DNA of 64,000 nucleotides from positions 124,001 to 188,000 of the IMG/VR virus record IMGVR_UViG_3300035145_003993; one strand, given 5' to 3'. The notes under the pieces were generated by a model. It had not been told where the DNA came from. It saw nothing but the letters and a program-made list of their open reading frames with translations, and ran no database searches. A program made the translations under genes and the position numbers. Positions 18,616-57,868 of the stretch are shown in pieces (the stretch's first letter is position 1; each line of letters starts with the position of its first letter).

Positions 18616-19604
18616 AATATAGTTTAAAAGATCAATATAAAAGTTTGTTAAAAGAAGAACTTGCAATTGTAAAAAGATTAAGTCAAAATAATAAAACAGA
18701 ACTTTTCGATGTCGATCTATTTAAAAATGGTAATATTAAAGGTAAAAAAGTTGAAATATCAGATGAAGATAAAAATCTTTTAAAAATATATAATGATTAT
18801 TGTTCTGACTCTGATCTTAAATTAATTAATTTTATTAAAAATAACAAAGATAATATAAAATTTCGAATCAACATAAATGACATGAATGACAATAATATAG
18901 TGAATTATCTTAATCAAAATTTTAGTGAAACAATAAATTGGAATCCAAATAAAGTAAAAGATAAAGGCAGAGGAGAAGTTTCATTACATTTAGCATTTAA
19001 TTCTGATTTAAACTTTAAAGAGCCTGATTTTGTTTCTCACGATAATAAAAGAAAATTTTCTGTTAAATCATTTATAACAAACCAAGGAAACATTACTAAT
19101 GTTAGGTCTTCAAAAGACAATAGATTTATAGAAATATACGATAATAATAAAGAAATCAAATCTATATTTGATAATCAAAATTGGAACAACCTATTTTCAA
19201 TAACATCAGATTTTATAAAACAAAGTAGTAAAACTTATAATCCAATAGAATTTAAAAAAACAATTGAACATTTTGTTATAGAAAAAGATTTTTCAAAAGA
19301 AGAAATAATTTTAAAACTTAAAAAAATAAAAGAATTTTTAAACGAAATAAAAATAGAGTTAACAAAAGATCATGGTTCTGAATGTATTATTGGTATTGAC
19401 AAGAATAAACAATTTTTTATAGTTAATAGAGAAAATGCTATCGAAAAATTAGGTATATACAGAATTAATGGTAATGAAATTACTTACTATCATACAGATG
19501 ATACTAGAAGACTTACTTTTTCTAAGGTTATAGATATACTAATTAACGAAGTAAATCAACTTAAAGAGTCAAAGTTTAAAAGCGTATATAAACATTTATT
19601 TTAA
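18612..19604 (+). CDS. Hypothetical protein with leader, possible PD-(D/E)xK nuclease
   Basis: Start at the ATGA overlap, 18612; GRGE...EPDF...FSVKS. Confidence 0.55.
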   Translation: MKYSLKDQYKSLLKEELAIVKRLSQNNKTELFDVDLFKNGNIKGKKVEISDEDKNLLKIYNDYCSDSDLKLINFIKNNKDNIKFRININDMNDNNIVNYLNQNFSETINWNPNKVKDKGRGEVSLHLAFNSDLNFKEPDFVSHDNKRKFSVKSFITNQGNITNVRSSKDNRFIEIYDNNKEIKSIFDNQNWNNLFSITSDFIKQSSKTYNPIEFKKTIEHFVIEKDFSKEEIILKLKKIKEFLNEIKIELTKDHGSECIIGIDKNKQFFIVNRENAIEKLGIYRINGNEITYYHTDDTRRLTFSKVIDILINEVNQLKESKFKSVYKHLF

Positions 19605-23896: not shown

Positions 23897-25528
23897 TTAA
23901 TACATATCATCTGATAGTTGAACTAATTGAACTCCTCCATGACCGTCATTACTATTTAAAACAATACACCCTACTGATATTAGACTATTACATACACTAA
24001 CTGCGTTTGATATTGCAGTTGCAGTAACTTTTTGTGGATCAATAATTCCTTCATCAATCATATCAACATACGATTCAGTACGAACATCATATCCATAATT
24101 CCAATCTCTATTGTTTTTTATCATTTCAATAATATAATCAACTGGTTTATCTCCATTTTGCAAAATCTTTTTCAATGGAGACATACATGCGTCAGAAACA
24201 ATTTTTGAAACAGTGCTATCTAGCAAGGATTCTTCTTTGCTTTCTTCTAAAAGATTTATTCCTGCTCTTGCCAAAGCAATCCCACCACCTGGCAAGAATC
24301 CACTTTCAATAGCAGCTTTCGTTGCATGAAGAGCATCATCGATTCTATCTACTAATTCTAATAACTCAGATTCTGTATGAGCTCCAATTGAAAGAACAGC
24401 AACAATACCTTTATTAATAATAAGCCTTTGTTTATAAAAGACTTCATCTTCCTTTGAAAGAGTTTTATCTTCTAATTTTTTCTCAACAGCCTTCGAAATT
24501 TCATCAGAGTTTTCACAAGAAGCACATTCAACAAAAAGAGTTGAATTATGATTTGTTTCGATCTTTTTAGAATTCCCTAAGTCTGAAAGGAGAACATTAG
24601 ACATTTCTCTTTCATCTAAATCATAGAAAACTTTTGTTCCTAAAGCTTTAGCGAGATCATTTAAAATTTGATTTCTTTTTTCACCATAAAATGGAGATCT
24701 AACTGCACAAACTTGCAAAGTACCTTTTGAAACATTAGCTAACAAAGATTGAATTACTTCTTGTTCATAGTCATTTGCAATAATAAATAAAGATTTTCCA
24801 GTTTGATGTATTTTTTCTAAAATCGGAAGAATTTGTGAAAGACTATTTAATTTACAACTTAGGATTAAAATTAAAGGATCATCTAAAACTGTTTTTGATT
24901 TTTCATTGTCATTAATAAAATAAGGTGAAACATATCCACGATCAATTTTAACACCACGAACTAATTTAAGCTCTGTATTTGTAGTTTTAGATTTTTCGAC
25001 TGTAACTAGTCCAGAAGAACCTACTTCTGACATTGCGTTAGCAATCAAGTTACCAATATATTCGTCACCGTTAGCACTAATTGTTGCAACTTGCCTTATT
25101 TCTTCATTAGAAGAAACTTTCTTTGATTTTTTAGATAATATTTCAACAACATCAGAAACCTTTTTATTTAAGTAAGAAGTGATTTCTGATGGTGATCCTA
25201 TTCCTGTTTGCAAAGCTTGAGATGCTCTAAAATATAATTCTTTAGCTAAAACAGTTGAAGTTGTACTTCCATCACCCGCTACAGTTGCTGTATTTTCGCT
25301 AGCTTGTTTTAAAAGTTTTGCGCCAAGATCTTCAACTCTATTTTGTAGAACAATACTTTTAGCTACTGTTGCACCATCTTTAGTTAAATGAGGAGGTTCG
25401 TTATTTTTTTCTATTAATACTAATTTACCTCTTGGTCCCATTGTGATTGAAACAGCATCACAAAGTTTTTTTACTCCACTTTTTAGATGATTTTGTGCTT
25501 CTTCATCAAAGTATATTAAGTCTGACAT
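23897..25528 (-). CDS. groEL: Chaperonin GroEL
   Basis: ITMGPRG, TKDGATVAK, AGDGSTT, RIDDALHATKAAIESGFLPGGG, GIIDP. Confidence 0.95.
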   Translation of the reverse strand: MSDLIYFDEEAQNHLKSGVKKLCDAVSITMGPRGKLVLIEKNNEPPHLTKDGATVAKSIVLQNRVEDLGAKLLKQASENTATVAGDGSTTSTVLAKELYFRASQALQTGIGSPSEITSYLNKKVSDVVEILSKKSKKVSSNEEIRQVATISANGDEYIGNLIANAMSEVGSSGLVTVEKSKTTNTELKLVRGVKIDRGYVSPYFINDNEKSKTVLDDPLILILSCKLNSLSQILPILEKIHQTGKSLFIIANDYEQEVIQSLLANVSKGTLQVCAVRSPFYGEKRNQILNDLAKALGTKVFYDLDEREMSNVLLSDLGNSKKIETNHNSTLFVECASCENSDEISKAVEKKLEDKTLSKEDEVFYKQRLIINKGIVAVLSIGAHTESELLELVDRIDDALHATKAAIESGFLPGGGIALARAGINLLEESKEESLLDSTVSKIVSDACMSPLKKILQNGDKPVDYIIEMIKNNRDWNYGYDVRTESYVDMIDEGIIDPQKVTATAISNAVSVCNSLISVGCIVLNSNDGHGGVQLVQLSDDMY

Positions 25529-37557: not shown

Positions 37558-38280
37558 TTACAATATTTGTGATATTTTATCTGCTTTTTTAATTCTATCT
37601 TCAATAACTGACCATTTAAGTTCTTTCATCATTGCGAATACATACATTTTTCTATTTTTTAAATAGTCCCTATAATAACTGTGTTCCCAACAATCCATTA
37701 CAATAACTGGTATCATTCCAATCATTACATTTAAACTATGTAAATCTATAATAGTATTAACATATCTTTTAAGATATATGTCATAATAAGTAACTGCCCA
37801 ACCATTTCTAGCTGAAAGACAACATGCAATAAAATCTTCTTGCCACGCATCAAAACTTCCAAAGTCTCTAGCAAGCCTCATATAGCTTAATGAATTCATA
37901 GTAATATTACTATTTAAATCAGAAATATTTTCAAAATATAATCCATGAAGAAATGCTGCATTGTGATTATATGTTTCGTCTACTTTTAAGCTTCTAAATG
38001 ATGAATGATTTAAATTAGCTAAAGATTTATCAACGCCATCAAGATTAGCAGAAATTTCATTTAATTGTTTAGCATAACCTTCTAATAATTCTTGATGAGA
38101 TTTTTTAGTTTTTGAAGATAAAAGTTCAGTCTGTAAATCAAACTTTCCTGCTTCAATAACATAAGCCTCTGATAGAAGACTTTTTGGATTACTTGTTTCT
38201 TTCTTATTGTTTTTATTCAATCCATTTTCGCTCAAAGATGAATCTACAGCTTCTTTAATAATTTTATCTAAATTTTTCAT
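37558..38280 (-). CDS. Fe/Mn superoxide dismutase-like protein with N-terminal leader
   Basis: SHQELLEGY, FLHGLYF, DFGSFDAW, GWAV and DCWEHSYY metal-ligand motifs. Confidence 0.8.
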   Translation of the reverse strand: MKNLDKIIKEAVDSSLSENGLNKNNKKETSNPKSLLSEAYVIEAGKFDLQTELLSSKTKKSHQELLEGYAKQLNEISANLDGVDKSLANLNHSSFRSLKVDETYNHNAAFLHGLYFENISDLNSNITMNSLSYMRLARDFGSFDAWQEDFIACCLSARNGWAVTYYDIYLKRYVNTIIDLHSLNVMIGMIPVIVMDCWEHSYYRDYLKNRKMYVFAMMKELKWSVIEDRIKKADKISQIL

Positions 38281-38738
38281 AAACTAAAATTGTCCTCAAA
38301 TTCTTTAATAGGTACGTCTAAATATTCTTCGTTAGAGTCTATATCATATACATTTGATTTTATATCAACATTAAAAGACTTTTTATATTTAACTTTTTTA
38401 TTAGGTGGAAAAATTTCACCTTTATTATTTTTACTAGGTTTCTTAGATTCTTTATCTTTTTCGTTTATTTGATAATAAGATTTTGACATTTCTAAACTAT
38501 CAAGGCCTTCACCCGGAAATAGTAATCTAACAAAAAATTCACCACCTTTTTCAATAACATTAATTACTGTATATAAAAAACCCGCTTTGTCTTTAACTTT
38601 TAAACCTCTAGCAGAAGCTATTAAGTCATTATCATCTTTGTCTCTAACTTCAATTTCATTTAAATTTAAATAATGATCAATTCTTTTTTCATATTCTTCT
38701 TTTAAAAGATCAAATATTTGATTACTATTATTTTTCAT
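38277..38738 (-). CDS. Hypothetical protein
   Basis: ORF track; ATGA coupling to the SOD-like gene. Confidence 0.65.
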   Translation of the reverse strand: MKNNSNQIFDLLKEEYEKRIDHYLNLNEIEVRDKDDNDLIASARGLKVKDKAGFLYTVINVIEKGGEFFVRLLFPGEGLDSLEMSKSYYQINEKDKESKKPSKNNKGEIFPPNKKVKYKKSFNVDIKSNVYDIDSNEEYLDVPIKEFEDNFSL

Positions 38739-38837: not shown

Positions 38838-39254
38838 TTATTCTTTGTATTGTTCAACAATAATAGAAGACTGTTTAAGAATACAAACTCCTGACATATC
38901 TCTATATTCTTCTTTGTATACAACCTTCTTGATTCCACTATTAATAATTGCCATAGCACAGTTTTCGCAAGGACTTAATGTTATATACATTACCTTATCT
39001 TTTGGATTATTATAATCAAGTTTTAAAAGAGCATTTATTTCAGCATGCAACAATCCGCTACATCCAGGTTCACTAGATTTAGGTTCGTTTAGCATTCCAG
39101 AAGCTCGTCCATTATATCCTAAAGAAAGTACTTGTGTGTTATCTGACGTTACTATAAGTGCTCCAACTTTAAAATCTGGATGATGACTTCTTTGTGCAAT
39201 TGTTTCTGTCATTTTCATCCATATTTTATCCCATGAGGGCCTATTTATATTCAT
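38838..39254 (-). CDS. dCMP deaminase
   Basis: KVGALIV, GYNG, LHAEINA, SPCENC. Confidence 0.9.
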   Translation of the reverse strand: MNINRPSWDKIWMKMTETIAQRSHHPDFKVGALIVTSDNTQVLSLGYNGRASGMLNEPKSSEPGCSGLLHAEINALLKLDYNNPKDKVMYITLSPCENCAMAIINSGIKKVVYKEEYRDMSGVCILKQSSIIVEQYKE

Positions 39255-40637: not shown

Positions 40638-41498
40638 TTAAGACAATATTGCTTTGACATAATCTTTAATTAATTTGTGAGCATTTATAACTGTTTTACC
40701 TTGTACTCTTGACATCGTTAAAGAGTTAATAATCATGTTTCTATTAGCCAAACTAAGTTGATCAGGTGAAAGTATAAACTGCCTAAAACATTCTGCAAAA
40801 AACTCTCTTTCATCTGTAGATCCATATTCTGAAGGCATGTGTTTCATAATTGACTCAATCATGTTTTCTATTTTAGATAATGGTGTAAACTTATCAGATA
40901 ACTCATAATCTTTACAAATTTGAGAAGAAATACTAGAAAAGCCACCTTCAGAATTATTATCAAGAAAGTCAGCAAAATCATAAAATGATTCTTCAGCATC
41001 GTTTAAAAGTTTTTCGTTTCTTTCATCATCATTATTGTTTTCTATTATATCTTTTATAGACTTAAGCTCTCTAATAATATTTGTATAAGTTTCTCCTATT
41101 AATGTTATATACTCACTTGAATCTGATGAAACAAAATTAACGTGTATACAATGACCTATTTCATGTACTAAAGTGTTTATAAGTTGTTCTTCATTTTTAA
41201 ATTTACTTAAATCAAAAACAATAGCTTTAATATCAGTTTCTAAAAAAGCTTTCCAGTTATGTAAAGCTGATTTAAAATTTTTATCAATTTCAGCTCTTTC
41301 TTTATTACCCTTAACAATGACAAGACTTTTAAACAATTCTGATAATGGTGTGTTTATTCTGAACTGTTTAAATTTAATATTAACGTTTTCTAACCCACTA
41401 ATCAAATTATTTGTCATATAAAAATCATCTTCTGCATTTTTTGAAAAATAAACTTTTATACCATAATAGTTTTCTATTCTCGTAAATTCAATATTCAT
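40638..41498 (-). CDS. Zincin metallopeptidase-like protein
   Basis: VHEIGHCIH and YGSTDEREFFAECF. Confidence 0.75.
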   Translation of the reverse strand: MNIEFTRIENYYGIKVYFSKNAEDDFYMTNNLISGLENVNIKFKQFRINTPLSELFKSLVIVKGNKERAEIDKNFKSALHNWKAFLETDIKAIVFDLSKFKNEEQLINTLVHEIGHCIHVNFVSSDSSEYITLIGETYTNIIRELKSIKDIIENNNDDERNEKLLNDAEESFYDFADFLDNNSEGGFSSISSQICKDYELSDKFTPLSKIENMIESIMKHMPSEYGSTDEREFFAECFRQFILSPDQLSLANRNMIINSLTMSRVQGKTVINAHKLIKDYVKAILS

Positions 41499-42103
41499 AT
41501 ATCACCTAACTTGATTAAATGTCTAATTAAATTATTATCTTTCTCTTTAAAAGTCGTATAATGTTTTGCACAACGTGGCTCGTACATTCCTTTTGAACCA
41601 ACTCTCTCTTCAGCAGATGCATTATTTATATCAAACATAGCTTCAGTAAAATAAGCATCTTGATCACAATCAGTACAGACTGCTGGGCATATTTCTATTT
41701 TTGTTGCCCAAGGCATTATATTTTTTATATTCTCAAAAGGTACCTCGTTTGCGTCTAATTGAATTGATGACACAATTATATTAATACCTTTACGATATAA
41801 AGAAATTAAAACAGAATCAATATCATGTATCATAAATGCTTCATCTACAGCAATCACTGTATTCGAATTATACATGTCTTCATTGACATAGCACAATATT
41901 TCTTCAGCATGATTAATACAAAATGCAGGATATGTTGCTCCTGTATGTGTGCTTATAGCTTCTTTCGTATAACGATTATCTCTTTTAGCTTTAAATGCTA
42001 TTACTTTACGACCTTTATATAAAGATCGGTCTATATCTGACATTAGTTTTGTCGTTTTAGATCCGAACATAGGCCCTGTATATATTTTAAATGTTGGATT
42101 CAT
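41495..42103 (-). CDS. tdk: Thymidine kinase (type II)
   Basis: GPMFGSKT, VDEAFM, CxxC...YEPRCxxH zinc site. Confidence 0.92.
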   Translation of the reverse strand: MNPTFKIYTGPMFGSKTTKLMSDIDRSLYKGRKVIAFKAKRDNRYTKEAISTHTGATYPAFCINHAEEILCYVNEDMYNSNTVIAVDEAFMIHDIDSVLISLYRKGINIIVSSIQLDANEVPFENIKNIMPWATKIEICPAVCTDCDQDAYFTEAMFDINNASAEERVGSKGMYEPRCAKHYTTFKEKDNNLIRHLIKLGDI

Positions 42104-42201: not shown

Positions 42202-43092
42202 TCAAGGTACGATATAAGCTGACCTAATATTAATTGTAAGTTCGATATCTACATCTTCTGGTAAAGAAATCTCACCAGCCGCTCTTACACTAAGTATCTT
42301 AAGAAATTCATAATCTGTCCATAAATCTTTTAAAACATTAGACTGTTTAAGAGTTACATCAACATTTAAAGATTGATTTCTCCAAAGAAGATGAACGAAT
42401 GAAATATTTTTATTTCCAGAATATGAAAAATTCCTATTATCTAATTTATTTTTTTTGCGTGAATTACTTAAACCTGATCTTTCTAGAAATATTCTATTAG
42501 ATAATTTATCTATAATTTGATTATAATATTTATTTTTTTCGGGATTATTTAATATTGTGTAATCAATATTATTGATGTCGATTTTTTCTTTACATTTTAT
42601 GTCTAATAGTTCATTTTTTCCGCTCTTTATCACTAAAGATTTTATTAATTCTTGCGTAGGAATTTCGTTTAAAGAATTAATAAAAGAAATAGATTTTTGG
42701 CAATTTTCTTCAAGATTTTCACTTTCTATAAGTAAAACATTTGGATAATATTTTAAATTTGATTTAAGCAAATCTTCATAATATTTTCTTACTATTAGTA
42801 TGCTATTTTCATCTTGACATTCATCACCTCTGATTTTTAATCTTTCTAAGATTGTTTTTTCACTAGGTAATAAAACAATATAAAGTATGTCAAGTCTATT
42901 TAGTTCTTTTAAAAGTTTATCATACCAAATCGATTCTATTCCTCTATCATAGAGTTTTGAATAAACAATCATTGACATACAACTTCTATCTTGAATATTA
43001 TAGATATAACCTGTTTCTTTATGAATTTTATTAAATAATGTAGTTTTACCACTACAGTCAGGTCCTTCAATAATAATATGTTGAAATCTCAT
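42202..43092 (-). CDS. Thymidylate-kinase-like domain fused to a degenerate thymidylate-synthase-fold domain
   Basis: IIEGPDCSGKTT, QDRS; C-terminus DNR...ISFVHLLWRNQSLNVDVTLKQSNV..DLWTD...IRSAYIV. Confidence 0.7.
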   Translation of the reverse strand: MRFQHIIIEGPDCSGKTTLFNKIHKETGYIYNIQDRSCMSMIVYSKLYDRGIESIWYDKLLKELNRLDILYIVLLPSEKTILERLKIRGDECQDENSILIVRKYYEDLLKSNLKYYPNVLLIESENLEENCQKSISFINSLNEIPTQELIKSLVIKSGKNELLDIKCKEKIDINNIDYTILNNPEKNKYYNQIIDKLSNRIFLERSGLSNSRKKNKLDNRNFSYSGNKNISFVHLLWRNQSLNVDVTLKQSNVLKDLWTDYEFLKILSVRAAGEISLPEDVDIELTINIRSAYIVP

Positions 43093-43155: not shown

Positions 43156-43365
43156 ATGTACCAAATTTTAGAAAATTATATACAACTTGTATTTGAAAAC
43201 GAAAAAAATAAAAACAAAACGTTTAAAGATATACTTAATAGTTTAAAAAATAGTCAAAATCCTAAAAAGGTACTAAGAAATACAGATCCTATAGAAAGAA
43301 ATACAGATCAAATAGGATTTGACCAATTAATTAAAAAATCTAGTAATTCTAATCAAACGCGTTAA
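43156..43365 (+). CDS. Short leader-bearing ORF, possible remnant
   Basis: MYQILENYIQLVFENE; RBS present; overlaps the dnaE stop. Confidence 0.45.
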   Translation: MYQILENYIQLVFENEKNKNKTFKDILNSLKNSQNPKKVLRNTDPIERNTDQIGFDQLIKKSSNSNQTR

Positions 43366-46300
43366 TCTTTTTAAGCTTAGCTAAACTTGATGACATACCC
43401 CAGTTAACATCATTACTAATATCAGCCAACCAAGTTGTAAATTCAATTTCACCTTCCATATCTCCCCATACTCGAAGCCATCCACTTCGATTATCAATAT
43501 CGACGCATTTCCATCTCATAAATGATTTACCGTTTTTAGTTGTTTTTCTAATAACTTCTGTAACAGTAAACCATCCAATTCCACGCTCACCTTTTGGTAT
43601 ATCAAAAATACTATTGATTTGCTTCTGTTTTAGTTTTTTAACTAAGCTTGGTGGAAACAATAAATCGTCATTTGCATCATTACTGAGTTCAAAATAGTTT
43701 TTAATTTTAGTACTTCTTGACCAATCACTAACAACTCTGTATTGTGAGATTAACTTTTCGACAATTGGAATGATTTCTTCACCATTTTTATTTGCTTTTT
43801 TAATAGCAGTTTTTGTCATTCCAAAGCTTCCTTTCTTTAAAATCATATAATTATCCAAGATTAAATCATGCATTTGTTTGTGATTGTCTAGTGTTCCATC
43901 TTGAAATTCTTGGAGTGACTTAAATGCTTCCATCTTTGTTAGTGATGAAAAAGCTGTTTTATTCATTTTTGAATGTTTCCATTCTCCTTCTTTATTGTAA
44001 AAAAGATCTTGTAAATTATTATATGGTCTATTTACAAATATTTCTTCAACAGCTTTGTCACCTACTCCTTTAAGAGATGTCAACGGAGGAACAAACGATT
44101 TTAAATCTTCTGAATATTCCCATTGAGATCCTGAGTGATTTATATCAATTGCTGATATGTCATATCCTAGTGCCTTAATTTCTGCAATTACTTTGGACAT
44201 TCCTTTAGGATTACCATTTTCTGATTGTAAAACAGTTGCTAGCCAGTCTGTTTCGTAGTGTGTATGAAGCCACGCAGCGTAATATGAGTCGATTGCATAA
44301 GAAACAGCATGACTTTTATTGAAACCGTAAACAGCAAAACCTTCTATTTCTTCCCAAAGTTTTTTAGATATATGTTCGGGTACATCATTAATTTCTTTTG
44401 CACCTTTAATAAACTTTTCTCTTGCAATTGTTTTTTCATCTTTTTTATTTCCCATTGTTGCGAGATTATTCTTAACAAGGGTTTTTCTCAGCTTATCAGC
44501 TTCACCTGGATCAAAACCTGATAGTTTTTGTGCAAGTAACATAAATTGCTCTTGAAATACAACGTAAGAAAATGTTGGTCCTAAAACTTCTTCGATAATC
44601 GGATGATCGTATTTAATTTGTTCTGCGTTTTGTTTAGATTTAACATATTTTTTATGAACATTAGCTTTAAGAGGTCCAGGACGATAAATAGCAGTTAAAG
44701 CTGCTAATTCTTCAATACTTTCTGGTTTAGCTTCTAATGAAAAGTTTCTAGCTCCTGTATTTGTAAATTGGAATATTCCTACAAATCTTCCATCATGATA
44801 TACATGCTTCCAGACATCTTGATCATTTTGTTCGTGAAATCTACAATTTAAATGTTTATCAAAGAATTTTTTAGCATCACTAAATTGTGGATTATTATTA
44901 CCCTCCTTTTTAAGGATTCTATAAATACAATTTTCAATATCTTTTAATAAGGATAAACCTAAGAAATCAAATTTAATAAAACCATTATCTTCTAAGTTTC
45001 TAAAATTTAATCCTTCTGACCATGGTGTTTGTAATTCTCCTCTTACACCTACGATAGGCATAGTTGTTTCTAAATGTTCAGGATCAGCTACTAACACACC
45101 CCCTGCATGACGACCAATTGCTCTATTCTGCATAAACAAAGAAGCAATATGAGTTTCAACTTCAGGATATCTTTCCATAAAATCTTTATATTCTGGAGAA
45201 TACTTTTTACAATCTTCATGCTTAAGAACAAAAACAGATTTTTCTTGATCGTCACCTTTTGCCATTTTCATAACTTGATCGTGAAGAGGACCAGTTACTT
45301 TATTTACTTCATCATACGGAATATCATAAAACTTAGATATATCTTTAATAAGAGACTTAAGCTTTAAAGTATTAAAGTTAGAAACAGGAATAACAGCATC
45401 GTTTCCATATAATTCTTTTGCAGCATTAATTAACTCATCACGATCACCAGCATCTGTATCAATATCAGGCCATGAAACCCTATGCCTTCCTAAGAATCTT
45501 GCCCAAAGAAGATCGTATGGAAGAGGGTCAACTTGTGTAATGCCTAATAAATAATTAACTAAAGAGCCAGCTCCTGATCCTCTTCCTGGCCCTAATAAAG
45601 TTTTCTTTTCAGCCTTCTTAAAAATTTCATACATCGTAATAAAATATGCTTCGTGACCAAGATACTTTATATCTGATAATTCTTCTTTAGCACGATCAAC
45701 ATAAACTTGGTTTGTATGAAAACCATGGCTAACGAGTGAATCTTTAACTAAAGAAGATAAGTGTTGAAAAGGAGTTTTATTTGGAACGTTTATTGTAGGT
45801 AGTTTAACTCCTGTATCAATCCAAGTATCTTCAAATTCATTCCAAACGATATCATGAGTTCGATTAATAGCATCACGAACTAATTCTTCATTACCTTTAT
45901 AAAATTCATAAGTAGGATATGAATCAAGAAATTCTTCCCACATTTGAGAAGCATTTTTTGGATATAATTCACACTTAAGATCTTCAAATTCTGGAAGAGA
46001 AAGATTATCTCTTTTTCCTAACCAACCAAGTTTTTTATATAATTCTCGAGCTTGCCATTTTTCATTTGAAGGGTAATGTGAATCTGCTGTACAAATAAGA
46101 GGAATACCTGTTAATTTATGGTGTTCTATAAGATAATCATTAACAGTATGCTGTTTTTCTAATTTATTAAACTGTAATTCAAGTTTAAAATTGTTTTCTC
46201 CAACACAAGAAACAAACCTATCTGTTAGATTTAATAATTCTTTCTGAATTTGTTCACGTGATTGATTATGAACTTCACCTCTTAAAATACGATTACTATA

Positions 46301-46444
46301 AATACCACCAAGGCAGTTGTGCACTAAAATATTGTTAGCAAAAAAATTGTGATTACCTTCAACAGTAATGTCGTAAACGTCAGAAGTCTCATCTATTTCT
46401 TCAATAATTTCAACTTCAATAAATTTTGTTTGAATGTCTTTCAA
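43349..46444 (-). CDS. dnaE: DNA polymerase III alpha, C-terminal part, preceded by a C-intein
   Basis: IntC ending VHN|C; GPGRGSGAGS, PDIDTD, GRHAGG, KFDFLG, YGFNKSHA. Confidence 0.95.
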   Translation of the reverse strand: MKDIQTKFIEVEIIEEIDETSDVYDITVEGNHNFFANNILVHNCLGGIYSNRILRGEVHNQSREQIQKELLNLTDRFVSCVGENNFKLELQFNKLEKQHTVNDYLIEHHKLTGIPLICTADSHYPSNEKWQARELYKKLGWLGKRDNLSLPEFEDLKCELYPKNASQMWEEFLDSYPTYEFYKGNEELVRDAINRTHDIVWNEFEDTWIDTGVKLPTINVPNKTPFQHLSSLVKDSLVSHGFHTNQVYVDRAKEELSDIKYLGHEAYFITMYEIFKKAEKKTLLGPGRGSGAGSLVNYLLGITQVDPLPYDLLWARFLGRHRVSWPDIDTDAGDRDELINAAKELYGNDAVIPVSNFNTLKLKSLIKDISKFYDIPYDEVNKVTGPLHDQVMKMAKGDDQEKSVFVLKHEDCKKYSPEYKDFMERYPEVETHIASLFMQNRAIGRHAGGVLVADPEHLETTMPIVGVRGELQTPWSEGLNFRNLEDNGFIKFDFLGLSLLKDIENCIYRILKKEGNNNPQFSDAKKFFDKHLNCRFHEQNDQDVWKHVYHDGRFVGIFQFTNTGARNFSLEAKPESIEELAALTAIYRPGPLKANVHKKYVKSKQNAEQIKYDHPIIEEVLGPTFSYVVFQEQFMLLAQKLSGFDPGEADKLRKTLVKNNLATMGNKKDEKTIAREKFIKGAKEINDVPEHISKKLWEEIEGFAVYGFNKSHAVSYAIDSYYAAWLHTHYETDWLATVLQSENGNPKGMSKVIAEIKALGYDISAIDINHSGSQWEYSEDLKSFVPPLTSLKGVGDKAVEEIFVNRPYNNLQDLFYNKEGEWKHSKMNKTAFSSLTKMEAFKSLQEFQDGTLDNHKQMHDLILDNYMILKKGSFGMTKTAIKKANKNGEEIIPIVEKLISQYRVVSDWSRSTKIKNYFELSNDANDDLLFPPSLVKKLKQKQINSIFDIPKGERGIGWFTVTEVIRKTTKNGKSFMRWKCVDIDNRSGWLRVWGDMEGEIEFTTWLADISNDVNWGMSSSLAKLKKINAFD
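46316..46444 (-). mobile_element. Split intein C-fragment (43 aa) of DnaE
   Basis: VYDITVEGNHNFFANNILVHN followed by Cys+1. Confidence 0.93.
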
Positions 46445-46463
46445 AATTATTCCTTTTTATTAG

Positions 46464-46492
46464 AATATAATACAATTAGTTAATATTTACAC
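46464..46492 (-). promoter_or_regulatory. Phage promoter GTGTAAA-N16-TATATT for the dnaE C-fragment
   Basis: -35 lies in the last codons of the endonuclease gene. Confidence 0.65.
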
Positions 46493-47426
46493 TTTCATTA
46501 ATTAAATCAATTGTATTATCAATTTCATTTTCCCATATAATCAAGTAGTTATAGTTTCTTTTTTTTGCTATCTTCATTTTGTAAGAATCAGCATTCCAAA
46601 TATCACCTGCTTTTATTTTTCCTCTTGGGAAATCAAGAATGCTATTTTCATTATATAGAGAAGGGTGTGCGTGCCAAAATAGACCATGGCATTCAATGAT
46701 TAAATTAAACTTTGGCAGATAAAAATCATATATGTAACATCTTTTGTTGTATAATAATTCATCTTTTGTCAAATTAATTCGATATTGAATAGAATAGTCA
46801 ATGTTATTTTCTCTTAATAATCTTTCAATTCTTTTTTCTGTTTTAGGTTGTGATGTTTTTTTAAGAGCACCAATTGCACCTTTAACAGCTCTTTCTGAAA
46901 TTATTGCATTTGCATTATCCTTACTTAATCCTTTCTTAAGCCAAAACTCAATGCAAAATGGAGAATTTGATCGTTTATAGTTAGATAAACTTTCTTTTGC
47001 ATCTTCAATATTTTCCGTTTTTTCTATCCAATACTCTAAAGTTTGTTTTTGGTTGTAAGGTTTACCTGACTTTTTTCTAGTTTTAACTGTTCCTTTTTGT
47101 CCTTTTAAAGAAGTCTTCAAATAGTAACTTTCAATTTCTTTTATTGAAGTGTTTTTTGGAAATTTAAACTGACTTCTGAATGCTGTTGAAGTTTTTTGAT
47201 TATCTACATGAAGCTTAAAACCGATTTTGTCTTTTAAAAGAATAGAAAAAGTTTGCTGTGATATATTTAACTCATTAAAGCATTTTCTATTGTCACGATT
47301 AATCATTTGATATAACATTGAAAACGAGTAAAGTTTATTAATAAAACCTTGTATTTCTTCTTTTGAGTAATAAGAAAAAAGTATTTCTTCTCTAATTTTC
47401 CATATATTTGTTTTTTTTGTTTTCAT
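46476..47426 (-). mobile_element. Free-standing Vsr-like homing endonuclease between the dnaE halves
   Basis: C-terminal YDFYLPKFNLIIECHGLFWH...IIWE; repeated EYWIEK/EFWLKKG segments. Confidence 0.85.
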
Positions 47427-47463
47427 TATATTATCCTCCTAGGCACATATTATATATTCTGCT

Positions 47464-48381
47464 TCAGAGGTTAATATTAATAATTATATCACCTTTAACA
47501 ATATCTTTTGTATCAATCCATCCTTTGTCTTTAACAAGAACACGATGATCAGGTGTAAGTTTGATTTCGTTACCTTCTTTGTCTTTAATTCTCATAAGCT
47601 TAGCACCTCCTCGGGTTTTGTCACCCCAGATTACTTTTTTAAATTCAGCTTTGCTAGTATATTCATTATAAGAAAGAACTTGGATTTCTTCACCTTTATT
47701 AAATCTTTCTACAACTTCTTTAATAGATAGATTTCCAGATGAAGTTTGTAAAGTTGTGTCAGGATGAAGACAAGCTGTAGATATGTGTAATCCTTCACCA
47801 TGTTCTTGAAGCATTTGAAAATCAATACGTGGGTATCTATAAAAACCATATTTATACGATTTTTTAACTAAAGTAAATAAATTGTGAAGACCTTTTTGGT
47901 TTTTTGCTGTAACTACCAAATGATATCTTCTTTTCCACTCATCTTTAAGGATATCAACATTTTTTGTTTCATCTTCGTCTTCAACAACTAATCCGCCACT
48001 TTCATCATCTGCGTCAATATCAACTTTTTCTTTTGATTTCCTTTCAGCAGCAGCGGCAGATTTTGCGTCTTTTACTGCTTGTTTGTGAGCAGCATATTCT
48101 TCAGACCATTGTTGAAGTGAAGGAACAAAATAAAATTCAACTCCATAAATTTGTCTATAATTCCTTCCTGATTTTTGCATTCTAATTGTATGAGATCTTG
48201 CATGAGCAAGACCATTACCGTTACCATGGTCTGTTAGTGCCCATGCATCCATACCCTGAGATTCAGACAAAACAAAATCAATATGATCAGATGGGTATCC
48301 TAATCCATCGAATGTTGAAAACGTGCTGTGTGCATGAAGACCGACAAATCTATCTGGTGGTGTTATTAAATCAATAGACAA
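47464..48381 (-). CDS. dnaE: DNA polymerase III alpha, N-terminal PHP domain plus N-intein
   Basis: LHAHSTFSTFDG, ALTDHG, IYGVEFY, YHLVV, ISTA|CLHPDT. Confidence 0.95.
   Translation of the reverse strand: MSIDLITPPDRFVGLHAHSTFSTFDGLGYPSDHIDFVLSESQGMDAWALTDHGNGNGLAHARSHTIRMQKSGRNYRQIYGVEFYFVPSLQQWSEEYAAHKQAVKDAKSAAAAERKSKEKVDIDADDESGGLVVEDEDETKNVDILKDEWKRRYHLVVTAKNQKGLHNLFTLVKKSYKYGFYRYPRIDFQMLQEHGEGLHISTACLHPDTTLQTSSGNLSIKEVVERFNKGEEIQVLSYNEYTSKAEFKKVIWGDKTRGGAKLMRIKDKEGNEIKLTPDHRVLVKDKGWIDTKDIVKGDIIININL
47467..47772 (-). mobile_element. Split intein N-fragment (102 aa) of DnaE
   Basis: Block A CLHPDT, block B LTPDHRVL, GW...GD. Confidence 0.93.
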
Positions 48382-53628: not shown

Positions 53629-53938
53629 TAAATACCTCTAATATATCTTCATCTCTAAAATATACTTTTTCATTATTTTCTCCTAATGCAACGTAATAGC
53701 CTAAAGGAAAATTCTTTGTTTGAAAATGTATAGGAATTGCTGTTATTTTTTCATTAGATTCTTTATCAATAAATGATATTAAATAAGACTTTTCGAAAAA
53801 AAATCTTCTTTCAACCATTGTGTTATAAAGATCTTCGTATTTTGCTTTTTTATAGTGTTTTGTATCTTTAAAAGACCAAAATTTAAGTGTATCTTTATTC
53901 AATCGCGTCTTCATAAGGTTCTTCAATAAATTCACCAT
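53618..53938 (-). CDS. Hypothetical protein
   Basis: ORF track; start probably MKTRLN. Confidence 0.55.
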   Translation of the reverse strand: MVNLLKNLMKTRLNKDTLKFWSFKDTKHYKKAKYEDLYNTMVERRFFFEKSYLISFIDKESNEKITAIPIHFQTKNFPLGYYVALGENNEKVYFRDEDILEVFSES

Positions 53939-54344
53939 TTTCTACTATTCTGTCAAGGTAATCTTCTAATTGTTCAAATGAAGTACAGACCTTAATACCA
54001 CTTCTTGCTAACATTAAATTAAATTTAGCACCTTCAGGTAAACCTGCACAAAAATAAATAATAGGTTTGTTAAATGCAAAAGCATAACCAGCTTCCCAAA
54101 TTGTTCCAATATCTTTGTCTCTAGTGTTTACTAACAAAAAGTCAGCTGTTTGAATGTGGTGAAGATTACCTGTAAAAGTTTCGTCTTGCACACTTTTTGG
54201 TGCATTTGGAGGACAAATAAAAATTCTGCGAGGTGAAGCTAATTCAAAATTATTTGATCGATCATCAAAAATTTTTTCAAGTTGAGTAAGTTCTTCGTCT
54301 TGTGTAGGATTAAACCAACCACTAGCTAAATAAATCTTTTTCAT
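53895..54344 (-). CDS. Nucleoside 2-deoxyribosyltransferase / dNMP N-glycosidase family
   Basis: IYLASGWF, ADF...DIGTIWEAGYA...KP; start MKKIYL at 54344. Confidence 0.88.
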   Translation of the reverse strand: MKKIYLASGWFNPTQDEELTQLEKIFDDRSNNFELASPRRIFICPPNAPKSVQDETFTGNLHHIQTADFLLVNTRDKDIGTIWEAGYAFAFNKPIIYFCAGLPEGAKFNLMLARSGIKVCTSFEQLEDYLDRIVENGEFIEEPYEDAIE

Positions 54345-54425
54345 TAAAATATTCCTTTTATAATAATTTTTTCTAAGTTTGTAATTGTTTTTCAATAAAG
54401 TTTACTATTTTTAATAACTTTAAAA

Positions 54426-55391
54426 TTAATTGTTGAATTGTTTTTTAACTTGATTTATGGCTCTTACATCATCATTCCACATCCTTGTAAAGATTTTTTC
54501 TTCACCAGATTTATTGCCGTTTAATTCTTCGCGGCGACAAGGGTAAATTGAATCTTCTTCATTGAATTCAAACAAATCGTTTTTAGGCTCTGGATGATAT
54601 AAATTAGTTCCTTTTGAAGTAAAAGTACCATCTGCTTGTTTAACTCTAAATGTTCTAACATAATGCATGTCAGGTTTTTCAAAATCTAAGCAAGTTGCAA
54701 CTTCAGGAATTCTTTCAACAACTAGTCTTGCTATTTTAGTAGCAATAATATTATCAACCTCAGGCTGAATTTGTACATCTTGTCTTTGTTTAATAAGACC
54801 AATTAAATCTTTTAAATTAAACCTTGCAATATAAAATGTTTCGATAGATTTTGGCATAATAACTCTAGCGTCCATTAAAGAAATTAGTTTTGAATCTACC
54901 ATATCAGAATATAATTGTTTTGCAGCAGCAGCAACTTCAATAAATCTATGGTAAAAATCAGAATTTTCAATAGACTCTGGAACTAAAATATTATCGTGTC
55001 GTAGGTCTCTATCACCTGTGCATTGAGCAGCAAATGATCCTGCTCTGTGTCTAATTAAGTGTGTTACGGTTTGAGTATCAATACCACTTATCCTAAAAGT
55101 AAATCCTAAACATTCCATAGGCGTTGGTAAGGCTCTAAAATTTAGTACGTCTTGAAGGTTTTGTGAGGCCTCTTCAGGTGAAGCATTATTAAAGTCAGTT
55201 TCAAAAGGTCGATCAGCCCATGTTGCCTTGGTCATATTCCAAGCTATTTCTTGTGCTTGCTTTTGTGTTGGAGCATCAATCACTTCAATTTTAAGTGATT
55301 CTAAATTGTTAATATAGTTTGTAACAGGAACTTCGTTAAACTTTAAAAGCATAGGAAGTTGAATCTTATCTAAATCATTATTAATTGGCAA
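54426..55391 (-). CDS. Divergent ThyX-like flavoprotein
   Basis: RHRAGSFAAQC (Cys at the RHRx7S position), DARVIMP, NLKDL...QR. Confidence 0.8.
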   Translation of the reverse strand: MPINNDLDKIQLPMLLKFNEVPVTNYINNLESLKIEVIDAPTQKQAQEIAWNMTKATWADRPFETDFNNASPEEASQNLQDVLNFRALPTPMECLGFTFRISGIDTQTVTHLIRHRAGSFAAQCTGDRDLRHDNILVPESIENSDFYHRFIEVAAAAKQLYSDMVDSKLISLMDARVIMPKSIETFYIARFNLKDLIGLIKQRQDVQIQPEVDNIIATKIARLVVERIPEVATCLDFEKPDMHYVRTFRVKQADGTFTSKGTNLYHPEPKNDLFEFNEEDSIYPCRREELNGNKSGEEKIFTRMWNDDVRAINQVKKQFNN

Positions 55392-57145: not shown

Positions 57146-57868
57146 TTACTCGTGATTATTAATATAACTGTTAACAGTTTCTGGCCAAAGATCTTTAATA
57201 ATATCTAACATTCTAAATGCTAATTGTTGAATTTCCCATTGAGCTCCTTCATGTGTTCTTAAATTTATAAACTTTAATATGTTATTTAAATTCGCAGAAG
57301 CGTAATATTCTGTATAAAGATTTTGTGGTAAAATTCCACGCGCTTGTTCTCTGCATATACCATTGTTTACTAAATCATCAAATAATTTTAAAGAATTTTT
57401 GTGATAATTTTTAATAACATTCGATGCTTTAGTTTTAATTTTAACGCTACTTACTGCAGAGTCAATTTCTAATATAGGATCAATTAATTCATCTTGATTT
57501 GAAGATTGTCTATTTGATTTGTGTTGAGTTCTAAATTGATTAGGTTCATAAAATTCTATATTAGAATCTGTATATCTTCTAGAGATTTCGTTGTATGACC
57601 AAGTTCTGTGTCTATGATGTTGTGATCGAACAAATAATGGAACTTTAATTCTAAAAGTTGCAAAATTATGTTCTAAAGTAGATGTATGTTTATGTTTAAT
57701 TAAATAATTAATTAACTTTTTATCTTTATTATCAAGACTTTCTTTGTGAACTCCGAATGATACCCTTGCTGAATTTACTATTGTAATATCTTCGCCAACA
57801 TATTGAACTAATTCTATTTTTCCTATGCCATCTTCATACAGATTTTTTTCAATAGTATCTATTTTCAA
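57146..57868 (-). CDS. thyX: Flavin-dependent thymidylate synthase
   Basis: NSARVS, HTSTLEH, RHRTWSYNEISRRY, EQARGILP. Confidence 0.95.
   Translation of the reverse strand: MKIDTIEKNLYEDGIGKIELVQYVGEDITIVNSARVSFGVHKESLDNKDKKLINYLIKHKHTSTLEHNFATFRIKVPLFVRSQHHRHRTWSYNEISRRYTDSNIEFYEPNQFRTQHKSNRQSSNQDELIDPILEIDSAVSSVKIKTKASNVIKNYHKNSLKLFDDLVNNGICREQARGILPQNLYTEYYASANLNNILKFINLRTHEGAQWEIQQLAFRMLDIIKDLWPETVNSYINNHE

What the first reader, a model, noticed from the sequence alone, without database searches (positions are those of the whole stretch)
42202..43092. dNMP kinase fused to a degenerate thymidylate-synthase fold with a dCMP-type residue
Seen: the C-terminal about 90 aa align by eye to ThyA (DSR..PC..FQF...L....QRS.D...G.PFN...HLY), but with Cys->Asn, RS->KQ, His->Tyr, and Asp at the PFN-Asn position. 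Known: Asp there confers dCMP specificity in T4 dCMP hydroxymethylase. Inference: a relic or binding domain from a cytosine-modification pathway, possibly an allosteric or substrate-selecting module for the kinase.
Basis: partly seen in the sequence, partly recalled or inferred. Interest (0 to 1): 0.6.

Follow-up and report, generated by a model that had tools for sequence, protein, structure and literature searches.

The report
Phage kinase with dead mini thymidylate-synthase domain
This marine jumbo-phage gene encodes an intact small nucleotide kinase fused to a stripped-down thymidylate-synthase-fold domain that has lost its catalytic residues here, although hundreds of uncultured phage relatives keep them, which points to an undescribed minimal dCMP-acting enzyme family.

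Summary
Window 42202..43092 (-) encodes a 296-aa protein. Residues 1-142 form an intact YorR/dNK/TMPK-like P-loop kinase. Residues 143-296 have a thymidylate-synthase (TS) fold (VIA Z 9-9.8, 132-140 of 154 residues aligned; only TS-family hits). A family profile matches T4 dCMP hydroxymethylase, the AfhB dCMP hydroxylase and RB69 gp48, and more weakly E. coli ThyA, in the active-site register.

The domain is a minimal TS. It lacks about 58 residues between the first long helix and the SRR strand, and everything after the His207 strand.

The fusion is not a one-off. About 145 clusters (50% identity) of uncultured phage proteins carry this domain, mostly fused to the kinase and sometimes encoded as adjacent separate genes. 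Nearly all keep Cys146, Arg166, Ser167, the SRR pair and His207, have Asp at the Asn177 position, and usually have Asn at position 169, the published 5-hydroxy-dCMP synthase signature.

The window's protein belongs to one nested clade that changed five residues together (E186K, C229N, R249K, S250Q, H293Y). In this clade the C-domain evolves 3-5 times faster than in intact relatives but stays under purifying selection (dN/dS 0.18-0.55).

Verdict: an active kinase carrying a TS-like domain without the TS catalytic residues. The chemistry of the intact family is inferred, not shown.

The parts
42202..43092 (-). Whole gene: 296-aa kinase plus mini-TS fusion protein (P0001); stop codon TGA at 42202..42204
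   Evidence: ORF and translation. The word search gave 232 homologues. dN/dS is well below 1.
42667..43092 (-). N-terminal P-loop nucleotide kinase domain, residues 1-142 (YorR / deoxynucleoside kinase / thymidylate kinase-like)
   Evidence: phrog_761 'thymidylate kinase' 7.9e-14. Weak Pfam Thymidylate_kin, dNK and AAA_28 hits below cut-off. PDB YorR 2axp at 8e-4. Foldseek hits dAK 2jaq at 7.5e-6 and YorR with TMt 0.6.
43039..43065 (-). Walker A / P-loop, residues G10-T18, invariant in the family
42982..42990 (-). D35-R36-S37 motif (the DRY/DRF/ERS-type motif of dNMP and dN kinases), invariant in the family
   Evidence: (aligned to the DRF motif of YorR).
42823..42843 (-). LID-like segment R84..R88-G-D90 with invariant arginines
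42619..42666 (-). Interdomain linker and first helix of the TS-like domain (residues 143-158); low model confidence
   Evidence: pLDDT below 50 for residues 145-158.
42205..42666 (-). C-terminal minimal thymidylate-synthase-fold domain, residues 143-296
   Evidence: AF2 domain model with pLDDT 82 and pTM 0.80. Foldseek top hits are all TS family. VIA Z 9.0-9.8 with 132-140 residues aligned. Profile hits.
42535..42537 (-). K186: Glu in 96% of relatives with an intact Cys, changed to Lys/Arg throughout the Cys-lost clade
42430..42441 (-). D218-N219-R220-N221: remnant of the DSRR motif (ThyA S125, R126, R127); only the first Arg is kept
42406..42408 (-). N229 at the position of the catalytic Cys146. 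The position is Cys in 244 of 263 family sequences, and in all 135 representatives outside the lineages that lost it
42337..42348 (-). K249-Q250-S251-N252, equivalent to ThyA R166-S167-C168-D169. Arg and Ser are lost; Asn at 169 is as in 5-hydroxy-dCMP synthases
   Evidence: PMC13326640.
42313..42315 (-). D260 at the Asn177 position (dCMP-type residue), retained in every Cys-lost and Cys-kept member
   Evidence: PMC13326640.
42214..42216 (-). Y293 at the His207 position; the protein ends three residues later, as in AfhB/gp48-type short TS homologues
41495..42103 (-). Thymidine kinase, conserved downstream neighbour
   Evidence: PF00265 1.1e-32; synteny.
38838..39254 (-). dCMP deaminase, conserved member of the same module
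   Evidence: PF00383 4.3e-23; synteny.
57146..57868 (-). ThyX, the phage's actual thymidylate synthase
   Evidence: PF02511 2e-47. No PF00303 hit in the genome.

Best explanation
The gene encodes a functional small nucleotide monophosphate kinase. It is most likely the phage's dTMP or broad dNMP kinase, feeding the dTTP supply of a 74% A+T jumbo phage alongside the neighbouring thymidine kinase, dCMP deaminase and ThyX.

Its C-terminal half is a minimal TS-fold domain that is catalytically dead in this lineage.

In the wider family the mini-TS domain keeps the nucleotide-binding and nucleophile set of TS-type enzymes: Cys146, Arg166, Ser167, the SRR pair, His207, plus a conserved Glu and Tyr pair. 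It has Asp at position 177 and usually Asn at 169. I infer that the intact family binds dCMP, attacks C6 with the Cys, makes a C5-modified dCMP, and hands it to the fused or adjacent kinase, in the way T4 gp42 works with gp1. 5-hydroxy-dCMP is the best single guess for the product.

In the ancestor of the window's clade the Cys, the Glu and the His were replaced. The phosphate-binding residues then eroded. What remains is a non-catalytic module kept for kinase folding or oligomerisation, or for residual non-covalent cytosine-nucleotide binding.

Shown: the fold, the homology, the residue states, the phylogenetic polarity, the relaxed but still purifying selection, and the fused/split gene relationship.
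Inferred: the kinase substrate, any chemistry of the intact domain, and the present role of the dead domain.
For: Kinase:
- The P-loop, DRS motif and LID arginines are invariant.
- The fold matches dNK, NMP kinases and YorR; phrog_761 scores 7.9e-14.
- It is the only TMPK-like gene found in the 211-kb record.
- N-domain dN/dS is 0.01-0.24.

TS fold and homology.

Family conservation:
- 145 clusters at 50% identity carry the domain.
- Cys is present in 244 of 263 sequences, R166 in 248, S167 in 249, D177 in 249, and position 169 is N in 185 and D in 52.

Coordinated loss in the window's clade:
- E186K/R, C229N, R249K/T, S250Q/K/E and H293Y/F.
- The clade is monophyletic at 100/100 and nested among Cys-kept members.

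Relaxed selection on the C-domain:
- Identity is N 0.76 / C 0.51 in Cys-lost pairs, against 0.76 / 0.77 in Cys-kept pairs.
- C-domain dN/dS is 0.18-0.55 in Cys-lost pairs, against 0.05-0.13 in Cys-kept pairs.

Functional coupling of kinase and mini-TS:
- They are separate, adjacent genes in L019 (151 aa plus 188 aa) and fused at the same syntenic site in L021.
- The 151-aa protein is 46% identical to the kinase half of the fusion, E 5e-35.

Other:
- N177D with D169N is the experimentally supported 5hodCMP synthase signature, and a YorR-like kinase sits in those gene clusters (PMC13326640).
- There is no second mini-TS and no ThyA in the genome.
Against: - No biochemical data exist for any member.
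- The mini-TS lacks the roughly 58-residue segment that carries W80, W83 and Y94, and lacks the C-terminal tail. It is unclear how a folate or flavin cofactor would bind, so the intact domain may not be a modifying enzyme at all.
- In the PolA-type phages (L019, L021) a separate full-size dCMP-type TS homologue sits in the same cluster. There the mini-TS is not needed as the primary modifier.
- In the dead clade, D260 stays invariant, the replacement residues N229, K/R186 and Y/F293 are themselves conserved, and a separate lineage (P0128) also changed Cys to Asn. This looks more like a remodelled binding pocket than plain decay.
- dS is saturated for most pairs, so only the window-P0003 comparison (C-domain dN/dS 0.18) is reliable.
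Confidence: 0.62

Rival explanations
1. The C-terminal domain of this clade has taken on a new role as a non-covalent cytosine-nucleotide sensor or substrate-selecting module that tunes the fused kinase. Asp260 still reads the cytosine face, Asn229 hydrogen-bonds where Cys used to attack, and binding of dCMP or dCTP changes kinase activity or specificity.
For: - D260, R238, Y189, Y190 and E204 are invariant across nine Cys-lost sequences whose C-domains are only about 50% identical.
- The replacement residues N229, K/R186 and Y/F293 are conserved within the clade.
- Cys changed to Asn independently in P0128.
- C-domain dN/dS is 0.18-0.55, well below 1.
- The full-length ORF is kept in all members, with no truncations.
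Against: - In the window's protein the phosphate clamp is largely gone: SRR reads NRN, R166 is K and S167 is Q. These positions vary within the clade, as expected for decay.
- The interdomain geometry is not predicted with confidence (full-length pTM 0.51, linker pLDDT below 50).
- No allosteric TS-fold domain is known.
Confidence: 0.25
2. Throughout the family, intact members included, the mini-TS domain is not a C5-modifying enzyme. It is either a structural dimerisation scaffold for the kinase, or it catalyses a cofactor-free reaction on dCMP such as Cys-assisted hydrolytic deamination or C5 proton exchange. In that case the window's copy has simply lost a dispensable side activity.
For: - The cofactor-binding parts of TS are absent: the model aligns to E. 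coli TS 1..212 using only 154 residues.
- The gene always sits with a dCMP deaminase and ThyX, in a dTTP-supply context rather than with glycosyltransferases.
- Some phages also have a full-size dCMP-type TS homologue.
- No PF00303 enzyme was found in 19 related viral records. The marine group therefore shows no other hallmark of a T4-like cytosine-replacement pathway.
Against: - A scaffold would not need near-invariant Cys, Arg-Ser, Asp and His across 145 clusters that are under 50% identical.
- A Cys-dependent deaminase would duplicate the adjacent zinc dCMP deaminase.
- The homodimer prediction gave no verdict.
Confidence: 0.3
3. The resemblance to TS is convergent or a chance by-eye match, and the C-terminal domain is an unrelated alpha/beta fold.
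For: - The window's sequence alone gives no significant TS hit.
- The narrow family profile against gp48 gives E 0.23.
- Foldseek E-values are only about 3e-4.
Against: - All top structural hits are TS family: 263 chains at Z of 8 or more, with over 130 of 154 residues aligned.
- The diverse profile hits T4 dCH, AfhB and gp48 significantly, and ThyA more weakly, always in the same active-site register.
- Standalone members hit phrog_160 'thymidylate synthase' at about 1e-6, and PF00303 weakly at profile positions 144-223.
- The Atlas structure neighbours include PF00303 clusters.
Confidence: 0.02

Closest known systems
5-hydroxy-dCMP synthases (phage HY126 AfhB, PDB 9iqu/9iqc; RB69 gp48; DLP3 gp80): flavin-dependent short TS homologues
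   Same: - TS fold: among the top structural hits, tied at Z 9-9.8 with MilA and ordinary thymidylate synthases (Z 9.7 and 9.2).
- hhalign to gp48 gives E 7.6e-7.
- Asp at 177, Asn at 169 and the SAH motif are shared.
- Both protein types end a few residues after the His207 strand.
- Both are associated with a YorR-like nucleotide kinase (PMC13326640).
   Different: - The domain here is 154 aa against 217-238 aa. It is about 16 residues shorter between SRR and Cys, and the N-terminal half is about 58 residues shorter.
- It is fused to the kinase rather than merely clustered with it.
- The window's copy lacks Cys, Arg166, Ser167 and His207.
- No arabinosyl- or glycosyltransferase cluster is present.
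- Flavin binding is untested.
T4 dCMP hydroxymethylase gp42 (PDB 1b49, 6a9a), with T4 gp1 dNMP kinase
   Same: - It is the best sequence-profile hit in PDB (6.8e-4).
- It has the dCMP-type Asp179.
- The logic is the same: modify dCMP, then phosphorylate it with a phage kinase.
   Different: - gp42 is a 246-aa folate-dependent enzyme with Asp at position 169.
- gp42 and gp1 are separate proteins, and gp1 belongs to a different kinase family.
- The mini-TS lacks the folate-binding elements.
Thymidylate synthase ThyA (PF00303)
   Same: - Same fold and same active-site strand order.
- SRR, Cys146, Arg166-Ser167 and His207 align.
   Different: - The window protein does not reach the Pfam cut-off, and there is no PF00303 hit in the genome.
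- Position 177 is Asp, not Asn.
- The residue 70-120 region and residues 213-264 are missing.
- The phage's real TS is ThyX.
Viral thymidylate kinase / thymidylate synthase fusion proteins of about 437 aa (ESM Atlas cluster with PF00303 in 100% and PF02223 in 39% of members)
   Same: A kinase plus TS-fold fusion in Uroviricota. It is the nearest annotated cluster by language-model features (score 0.91).
   Different: Those proteins carry a full-size TS domain that Pfam recognises. I could not retrieve a sequence, so their residue at position 177 and their domain order are unknown.
Bacillus SPbeta prophage YorR (PDB 2axp, 3kb2)
   Same: Closest solved relative of the N-terminal kinase domain (E 8e-4; TMt 0.59-0.61). 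It shares the P-loop, the DR-x motif and the Arg-rich LID.
   Different: YorR is a single-domain protein of 173 aa with no established substrate and no TS-like domain.

Membership tests
Thymidylate synthase / dCMP hydroxymethylase superfamily (fold level) | TS alpha/beta fold with the central sheet and the active-site strand order | tested here: met
   Domain model with pLDDT 82. Foldseek top hits are all TS family. VIA Z 9.0-9.8 with 132-140 of 154 residues aligned to E. coli TS 1..212.
Thymidylate synthase / dCMP hydroxymethylase superfamily (fold level) | Detectable sequence homology across the SRR ... Cys ... RS ... N/D177 ... H207 motifs | tested here: met
   The profile of 58 family members hits T4 dCH at 6.8e-4 and AfhB at 2.1e-3, RB69 gp48 at 7.6e-7 and, more weakly, E. 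coli ThyA at 4.1e-5 with probability 69.8%. It is not met by the window sequence alone.
Catalytically active TS-type enzyme (ThyA, dCH, AfhB) | Nucleophilic Cys146 | tested here: not met
   The position is N229 in the window protein. It is Cys in 244 of 263 family sequences.
Catalytically active TS-type enzyme (ThyA, dCH, AfhB) | Phosphate clamp: Arg126', Arg127', Arg166 and Ser167 (plus Arg21) | tested here: not met
   The window has N219-R220-N221 and K249-Q250. The family has SRR and RS in about 95% of sequences. The Arg21 equivalent could not be assigned with confidence.
Catalytically active TS-type enzyme (ThyA, dCH, AfhB) | His207, which contacts the deoxyribose 3'-OH | tested here: not met
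   Y293 in the window. His in 99% of representatives with an intact Cys.
Folate-dependent ThyA (PF00303) | Pfam gathering score, and the folate-binding segment (W80, W83, Y94 region) plus the C-terminal tail | tested here: not met
   No PF00303 hit for the protein or the genome. The domain has 154 residues where ThyA has 264, and the protein ends 3 residues after the His207 position.
5-hydroxy-dCMP synthase (AfhB / RB69 gp48 type) | N177D (dCMP specificity) | tested here: met
   D260. Asp in 249 of 263 family sequences. The criterion is from PMC13326640.
5-hydroxy-dCMP synthase (AfhB / RB69 gp48 type) | D169N, the published diagnostic residue | tested here: met
   N252 in the window. In the family the position is N in 185 and D in 52 sequences. 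The criterion is from PMC13326640.
5-hydroxy-dCMP synthase (AfhB / RB69 gp48 type) | Acidic residue at the L143 position | tested here: inconclusive
   The loop before the Cys is 11-16 residues shorter than in ThyA and gp48. The family has D/E/N at positions -2 and -3 from the Cys, while the window has N227-K228. Positional equivalence is uncertain.
5-hydroxy-dCMP synthase (AfhB / RB69 gp48 type) | Flavin cofactor and O2-dependent formation of 5-hydroxy-dCMP | not testable with these tools
   This needs purified protein and LC-MS.
P-loop dNMP / thymidylate kinase (YorR-like) | Walker A motif, DR-x motif and Arg-rich LID on an NMP-kinase fold | tested here: met
   The motifs are invariant. Foldseek matches dAK, NMP kinases and YorR. 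phrog_761 scores 7.9e-14.
P-loop dNMP / thymidylate kinase (YorR-like) | Pfam Thymidylate_kin (PF02223) gathering score | tested here: not met
   20.4 bits against a cut-off of 27, and 13.7 bits in the genome scan.
P-loop dNMP / thymidylate kinase (YorR-like) | Phosphorylation of dTMP or another dNMP | not testable with these tools
   Inferred only from the context (TK, dCMP deaminase, ThyX) and from its being the only TMPK-like gene found.

The most novel reading that the evidence does not exclude
The intact members of this family are a new minimal class of TS-fold enzymes, about 150 aa, with no folate-binding subdomain. They would make a C5-modified dCMP, most plausibly 5-hydroxy-dCMP using loosely bound reduced flavin, and channel it into a fused or adjacent kinase. 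That would mark an unrecognised cytosine modification in widespread marine jumbo phages and other uncultured phages. The window's clade would then be a natural loss-of-modification lineage that kept the domain as a pseudoenzyme.
Probability: 0.3. Interest if true: 0.8.

Novelty: new variant of a known kind. Interest (0 to 1): 0.58.

Why it matters
TS-fold enzymes are the entry point of almost every known pyrimidine hypermodification in phage DNA. In 2025-2026 a flavin-dependent hydroxylating branch was added to them.

A still smaller TS-fold module keeps the nucleophile and the dCMP-type and 5-hydroxy-type signature residues. It is physically coupled to a kinase in well over a hundred sequence clusters of uncultured phages. 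If it is active, it would widen the range of enzymes to look for when predicting modified phage DNA, and it would define the minimal catalytic core of the TS fold.

The window's clade is a natural comparison set. It has the same genome context and the same fusion, but the active site is erased. That gives a way to identify which residues matter and to connect genotype with DNA chemistry in metagenomes.

There is also an annotation point. These genes are currently called 'thymidylate kinase', 'thymidylate synthase' or 'hypothetical protein', and no Pfam model covers the C-terminal domain.

Tried and rejected
- Single-sequence searches of the window protein or its C-domain against PDB sequences and Pfam gave no TS hit. 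The close-family profile A2 gave only E 0.5 to T4 dCH and E 0.23 to gp48. A diverse profile was needed.
- tblastn of five family members (P0001, P0129, P0164, P0240, P0234) against 50,697 GenBank phage records found no full-length relative. The family appears to be uncultured only.
- Complex prediction on two copies of the C-domain gave no verdict (median 0.41 against a mark of 0.42). I do not use it as evidence either way.
- hhalign of the full-length family against RB69 ORF045, the YorR-like kinase of the 5hoC cluster, aligned only the P-loop. No specific kinship is claimed.
- Literature searches for a described kinase plus TS-like fusion, and for AfhB, returned nothing relevant beyond PMC13326640.
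- I tested the idea that a partner gene was lost together with the Cys. A giant ORF (1537 aa in L003/L004; annotated as 2350 aa in L012, only partly held in the locus) follows the dCMP deaminase in Cys-kept relatives. It is absent at that place in the window and in L009, and it was not found anywhere in the window's genome. It has no family hit, and with so few genomes the correlation may be purely phylogenetic. I leave it as an observation.
- The PHROG name of window 11175..12371 suggested PurZ and therefore a 2-aminoadenine genome. I rejected this: the protein is far closer to cellular PurA (about 4e-62) than to PurZ (about 1e-8).
- I could not retrieve the 437-aa TMPK/TS fusion cluster seen in the Atlas.
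Full report
**What is there.**
Window 42202..43092 on the minus strand is a clean 296-aa ORF. It lies in a 26% G+C, almost uniformly minus-strand gene array. The array belongs to a 211,364-bp IMG/VR virus record estimated 84% complete. A close relative is a complete 239,550-bp genome with terminal repeats, so this is a marine jumbo phage.

The neighbours are:
- DNA polymerase III alpha, split by an intein and a homing endonuclease (43349..48381);
- thymidine kinase (41495..42103);
- a HAD phosphatase and dCMP deaminase (38838..39254);
- a superoxide dismutase.

Further along are an Fpg glycosylase, a nucleoside 2-deoxyribosyltransferase, a MazG-like pyrophosphohydrolase and two ThyX genes. The order PolIII alpha, this gene, TK, an unknown gene, HAD, dCMP deaminase, SOD is conserved in relatives from many marine metagenomes.

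**N-terminal domain.**
Residues 1-142 are a small P-loop nucleotide kinase.
- Pfam gives only sub-threshold Thymidylate_kin, dNK and AAA hits.
- PHROGs gives phrog_761 'thymidylate kinase' at 7.9e-14.
- The best solved relative by sequence is YorR of the SPbeta prophage.
- The AlphaFold model matches deoxynucleoside, NMP and thymidylate kinases and YorR.
- The Walker A motif, a DRS motif and the Arg-rich LID are invariant in the family.
- The domain evolves under strong purifying selection, with dN/dS 0.01-0.24.
- It is the only TMPK-like gene detected in the record.

I infer that it is the phage's dTMP or broad dNMP kinase. No tool here can test the substrate.

The register itself comes from hhalign of a family profile against E. 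coli ThyA.

| ThyA position | Window residue |
|---|---|
| Cys146 | N229 |
| Arg166 | K249 |
| Ser167 | Q250 |
| His207 | Y293 |
| Asn177 | D260 |
| SRR (S125, R126, R127) | N219, R220, N221 |

The window sequence alone does not reach significance against TS. Two independent lines of evidence do.
- Structure. A model of residues 143-296 (pLDDT 82, pTM 0.80) finds only TS-family structures at the top with Foldseek: AfhB dCMP hydroxylase 9iqu/9iqc, T4 TS, E. coli TS and T4 dCMP hydroxymethylase. VIA-align gives Z 9.0-9.8 with 132-140 of 154 residues aligned, spanning E. coli TS residues 1..212, and 263 chains score Z of 8 or more. BFVD and the ESM Atlas agree.
- Sequence. A profile of 58 diverse family domains hits T4 dCMP hydroxymethylase (6.8e-4), AfhB (2.1e-3) and the experimentally validated 5-hydroxy-dCMP synthase RB69 gp48 (7.6e-7), and E. 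coli ThyA more weakly (4.1e-5, probability 69.8%). The catalytic Cys, the Arg-Ser pair, position 177 and the His207 strand align each time.

**A minimal TS.**
The domain uses 154 residues to cover what takes 212 in ThyA, and the protein stops three residues after the His207 position.
- Relative to ThyA, it lacks about 58 residues between the first long helix and the SRR strand. That segment carries W80, W83 and Y94.
- It lacks 11 residues before the Cys (16 relative to gp48).
- It lacks the whole C-terminal region that closes over the folate.

The end just after the SAH motif is shared with the AfhB/gp48 type of short TS homologues.

**The family.**
The word search found 232 proteins of about 296 aa, all metagenomic and marine. 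An exhaustive profile search with the C-domain alone found 145 clusters at 50% identity. Most are about 300 aa, with the domain at the C-terminus and a P-loop at the N-terminus. Some are standalone proteins of 150-220 aa.

Across 263 sequences the residue states are as follows.

| Position | State |
|---|---|
| Cys146 | Cys in 244 |
| Arg166 | Arg in 248 |
| Ser167 | Ser in 249 |
| 177 | Asp in 249 |
| 169 | Asn in 185, Asp in 52 |
| His207 | His in 215 |

An upstream Glu and a Tyr pair are also conserved at 90% or more.

A second subfamily, in phages with a family-A DNA polymerase, has Asp at 169 and a SAH-x-Tyr motif. In that group the kinase and the mini-TS are fused in some genomes (368 aa, L021). 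At the same syntenic site in others they are two adjacent genes (151 aa plus 188 aa, L019). The 151-aa protein is 46% identical to the kinase half of the fusion. This fused/split relationship argues that the two modules work together.

In both phage groups the gene sits next to or near dCMP deaminase and ThyX. The PolA group also has a dimeric-dUTPase-family gene, an NT5C nucleotidase and a separate short full-size TS homologue with Asp at position 177.

No member was found in 50,697 GenBank phage records. No Pfam model covers the domain. Sources name these proteins 'thymidylate kinase', 'thymidylate synthase' or 'hypothetical protein'.

**The window's copy is the exception.**
The Cys-to-Asn sequences closest to the window (P0001-P0009, and L022 in the complete 239.5-kb genome) form one clade with 100/100 support. 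The clade is nested inside Cys-containing relatives, so the loss is derived. P0128 and P0219 lost the Cys independently.

In this clade five family-invariant positions changed together: E186 to K/R, C229 to N, R249 to K/T, S250 to Q/K/E and H293 to Y/F. The SRR motif is partly eroded. P0006 still keeps SRR and the Arg-Ser pair, which suggests that the nucleophile, the Glu and the His went first.

Selection on the two domains differs between the two groups.

| Measure | Cys-kept pairs | Cys-lost pairs |
|---|---|---|
| Identity, N-domain / C-domain | 0.76 / 0.77 | 0.76 / 0.51 |
| C-domain dN/dS (Nei-Gojobori) | 0.05-0.13 | 0.18-0.55 |

For the window protein against P0003, identity is 0.99 in the N-domain and 0.80 in the C-domain. 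In that least saturated pair, dN/dS is 0.18 for the C-domain and 0.01 for the N-domain.

So the domain is relaxed but not decaying neutrally. The ORF is never truncated. D260, R238, Y189, Y190, E204 and the S-A of the last strand stay invariant, and the replacement residues themselves are conserved.

The genome has no second mini-TS and no ThyA. ThyX supplies dTMP.

**How it most likely works.**
Shown:
- an intact kinase fused to a TS-fold domain that lacks the nucleophile, most of the phosphate clamp and the deoxyribose-contacting His;
- hence no TS-type covalent catalysis in this protein.

Inferred: the ancestral, intact domain bound dCMP (Asp177) and used Cys146 chemistry at C5, with the product passed to the coupled kinase, as T4 gp42 works with gp1. 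The published signature for 5-hydroxy-dCMP synthases is N177D together with D169N, with Cys146 conserved. Those clusters also contain a YorR-like kinase (PMC13326640). Most of the family matches that signature and AfhB is among the top-scoring structural neighbours, so 5-hydroxylation is my best single guess for the intact enzymes.

That guess is weak for two reasons. The cofactor-binding subdomain is missing. And some phages carry a separate full-size dCMP-type TS homologue.

For the window's protein the domain now probably serves the kinase, either structurally or as a residual non-covalent nucleotide-binding module. A homodimer prediction gave no verdict.

**Novelty.**
Both the fold and the kinase belong to known kinds. 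The new elements are the minimal TS-fold module, its systematic coupling to a small kinase across many uncultured phage lineages, and a natural clade with the active site erased.

I found no description of this family in the literature searches. The nearest annotated thing is an automatically named 437-aa 'thymidylate kinase / thymidylate synthase' viral cluster with a full-size TS domain. I rate this a new variant of a known kind and of moderate interest.

No alternative genetic code was needed.

Noticed in passing
window 54426..55391 (-) and 57146..57868 (-): The phage has two ThyX genes. One is canonical (PF02511 2e-47). The other is a divergent 321-aa paralogue (7e-18; best PDB ThyX hit only 5.9e-5) with N- and C-terminal extensions. 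A second ThyX also occurs in the unrelated PolA-type phage locus L021. The divergent copy might have a different substrate or product.
   Followed up: partly
window 11175..12371 (-): This gene matches a PHROG named '2-aminooxy adenylosuccinate synthetase' (PurZ-like), which would suggest a 2-aminoadenine genome. The protein is in fact far closer to cellular PurA (about 4e-62) than to PurZ structures (about 1e-8). It is an ordinary PurA-type auxiliary gene, followed by a 'dehydrogenase' (12375..13436).
   Followed up: yes
window 43349..48381 (-): DNA polymerase III alpha is split. A PHP domain plus intein N-part lies at 47464..48381, a free-standing HNH/homing endonuclease at 46476..47426, and the rest of the polymerase with the intein C-part at 43349..46444. 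Some relatives have an uninterrupted 1191-aa gene (L003, L010) and others have the same split (L004).
   Followed up: partly
L003 13371..17984, L004 13371..17984 and L012 14076.., compared with window 38277..38738: A giant ORF of unknown function (1537 aa in L003/L004; annotated as 2350 aa in L012, where it runs off the locus) directly follows the dCMP deaminase in Cys-intact relatives. In the Cys-lost phages (window, L009) a gene of 153-159 aa takes its place. The giant ORF was not found anywhere in the window's genome. It has no family hit. The co-variation with loss of the catalytic Cys rests on very few genomes.
   Followed up: partly
L019 2629..3366 and L021 4693..5367: These are short full-size PF00303 homologues (245 and 224 aa) in PolA-type phages. 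They have Asp at the Asn177 position but Cys or Glu at position 169, so they match neither the hydroxymethylase (Asp) nor the 5-hydroxylase (Asn) signature. They sit in a cluster with a dimeric-dUTPase-family gene, ThyX, NT5C, the kinase/mini-TS gene and dCMP deaminase. They may make a different cytosine modification.
   Followed up: partly
L019 7544..7999 and 8001..8567: This is the split version of the fusion. A 151-aa kinase gene ends two bases before the start of a 188-aa standalone mini-TS gene. The mini-TS gene in turn overlaps the start of dCMP deaminase by four bases, which suggests translational coupling of all three.
   Followed up: yes
window 15620..19604: This is the only block of plus-strand genes in the window. 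It coincides with a sign change of GC and AT skew (skew +0.22 at 16001-18000), so it may be an inversion or a divergent transcription unit.
   Followed up: no
window 23897..25528 (-), 37558..38280 (-), 2036..3328 (-), 53895..54395 (-): The window carries several auxiliary genes: a GroEL-like chaperonin (phrog_5725, 3e-132), an Fe/Mn superoxide dismutase, an ATP-dependent DNA ligase and a nucleoside 2-deoxyribosyltransferase.
   Followed up: no
BFVD hit A0A3G1L3Q7 (Synechococcus phage S-CBWM1, 151 aa): An uncharacterised 151-aa protein of a cultured cyanophage matches the mini-TS model (Foldseek E 2.4e-4, TMt 0.51). It could be a standalone mini-TS in an isolate that can be grown and tested.
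   Followed up: no
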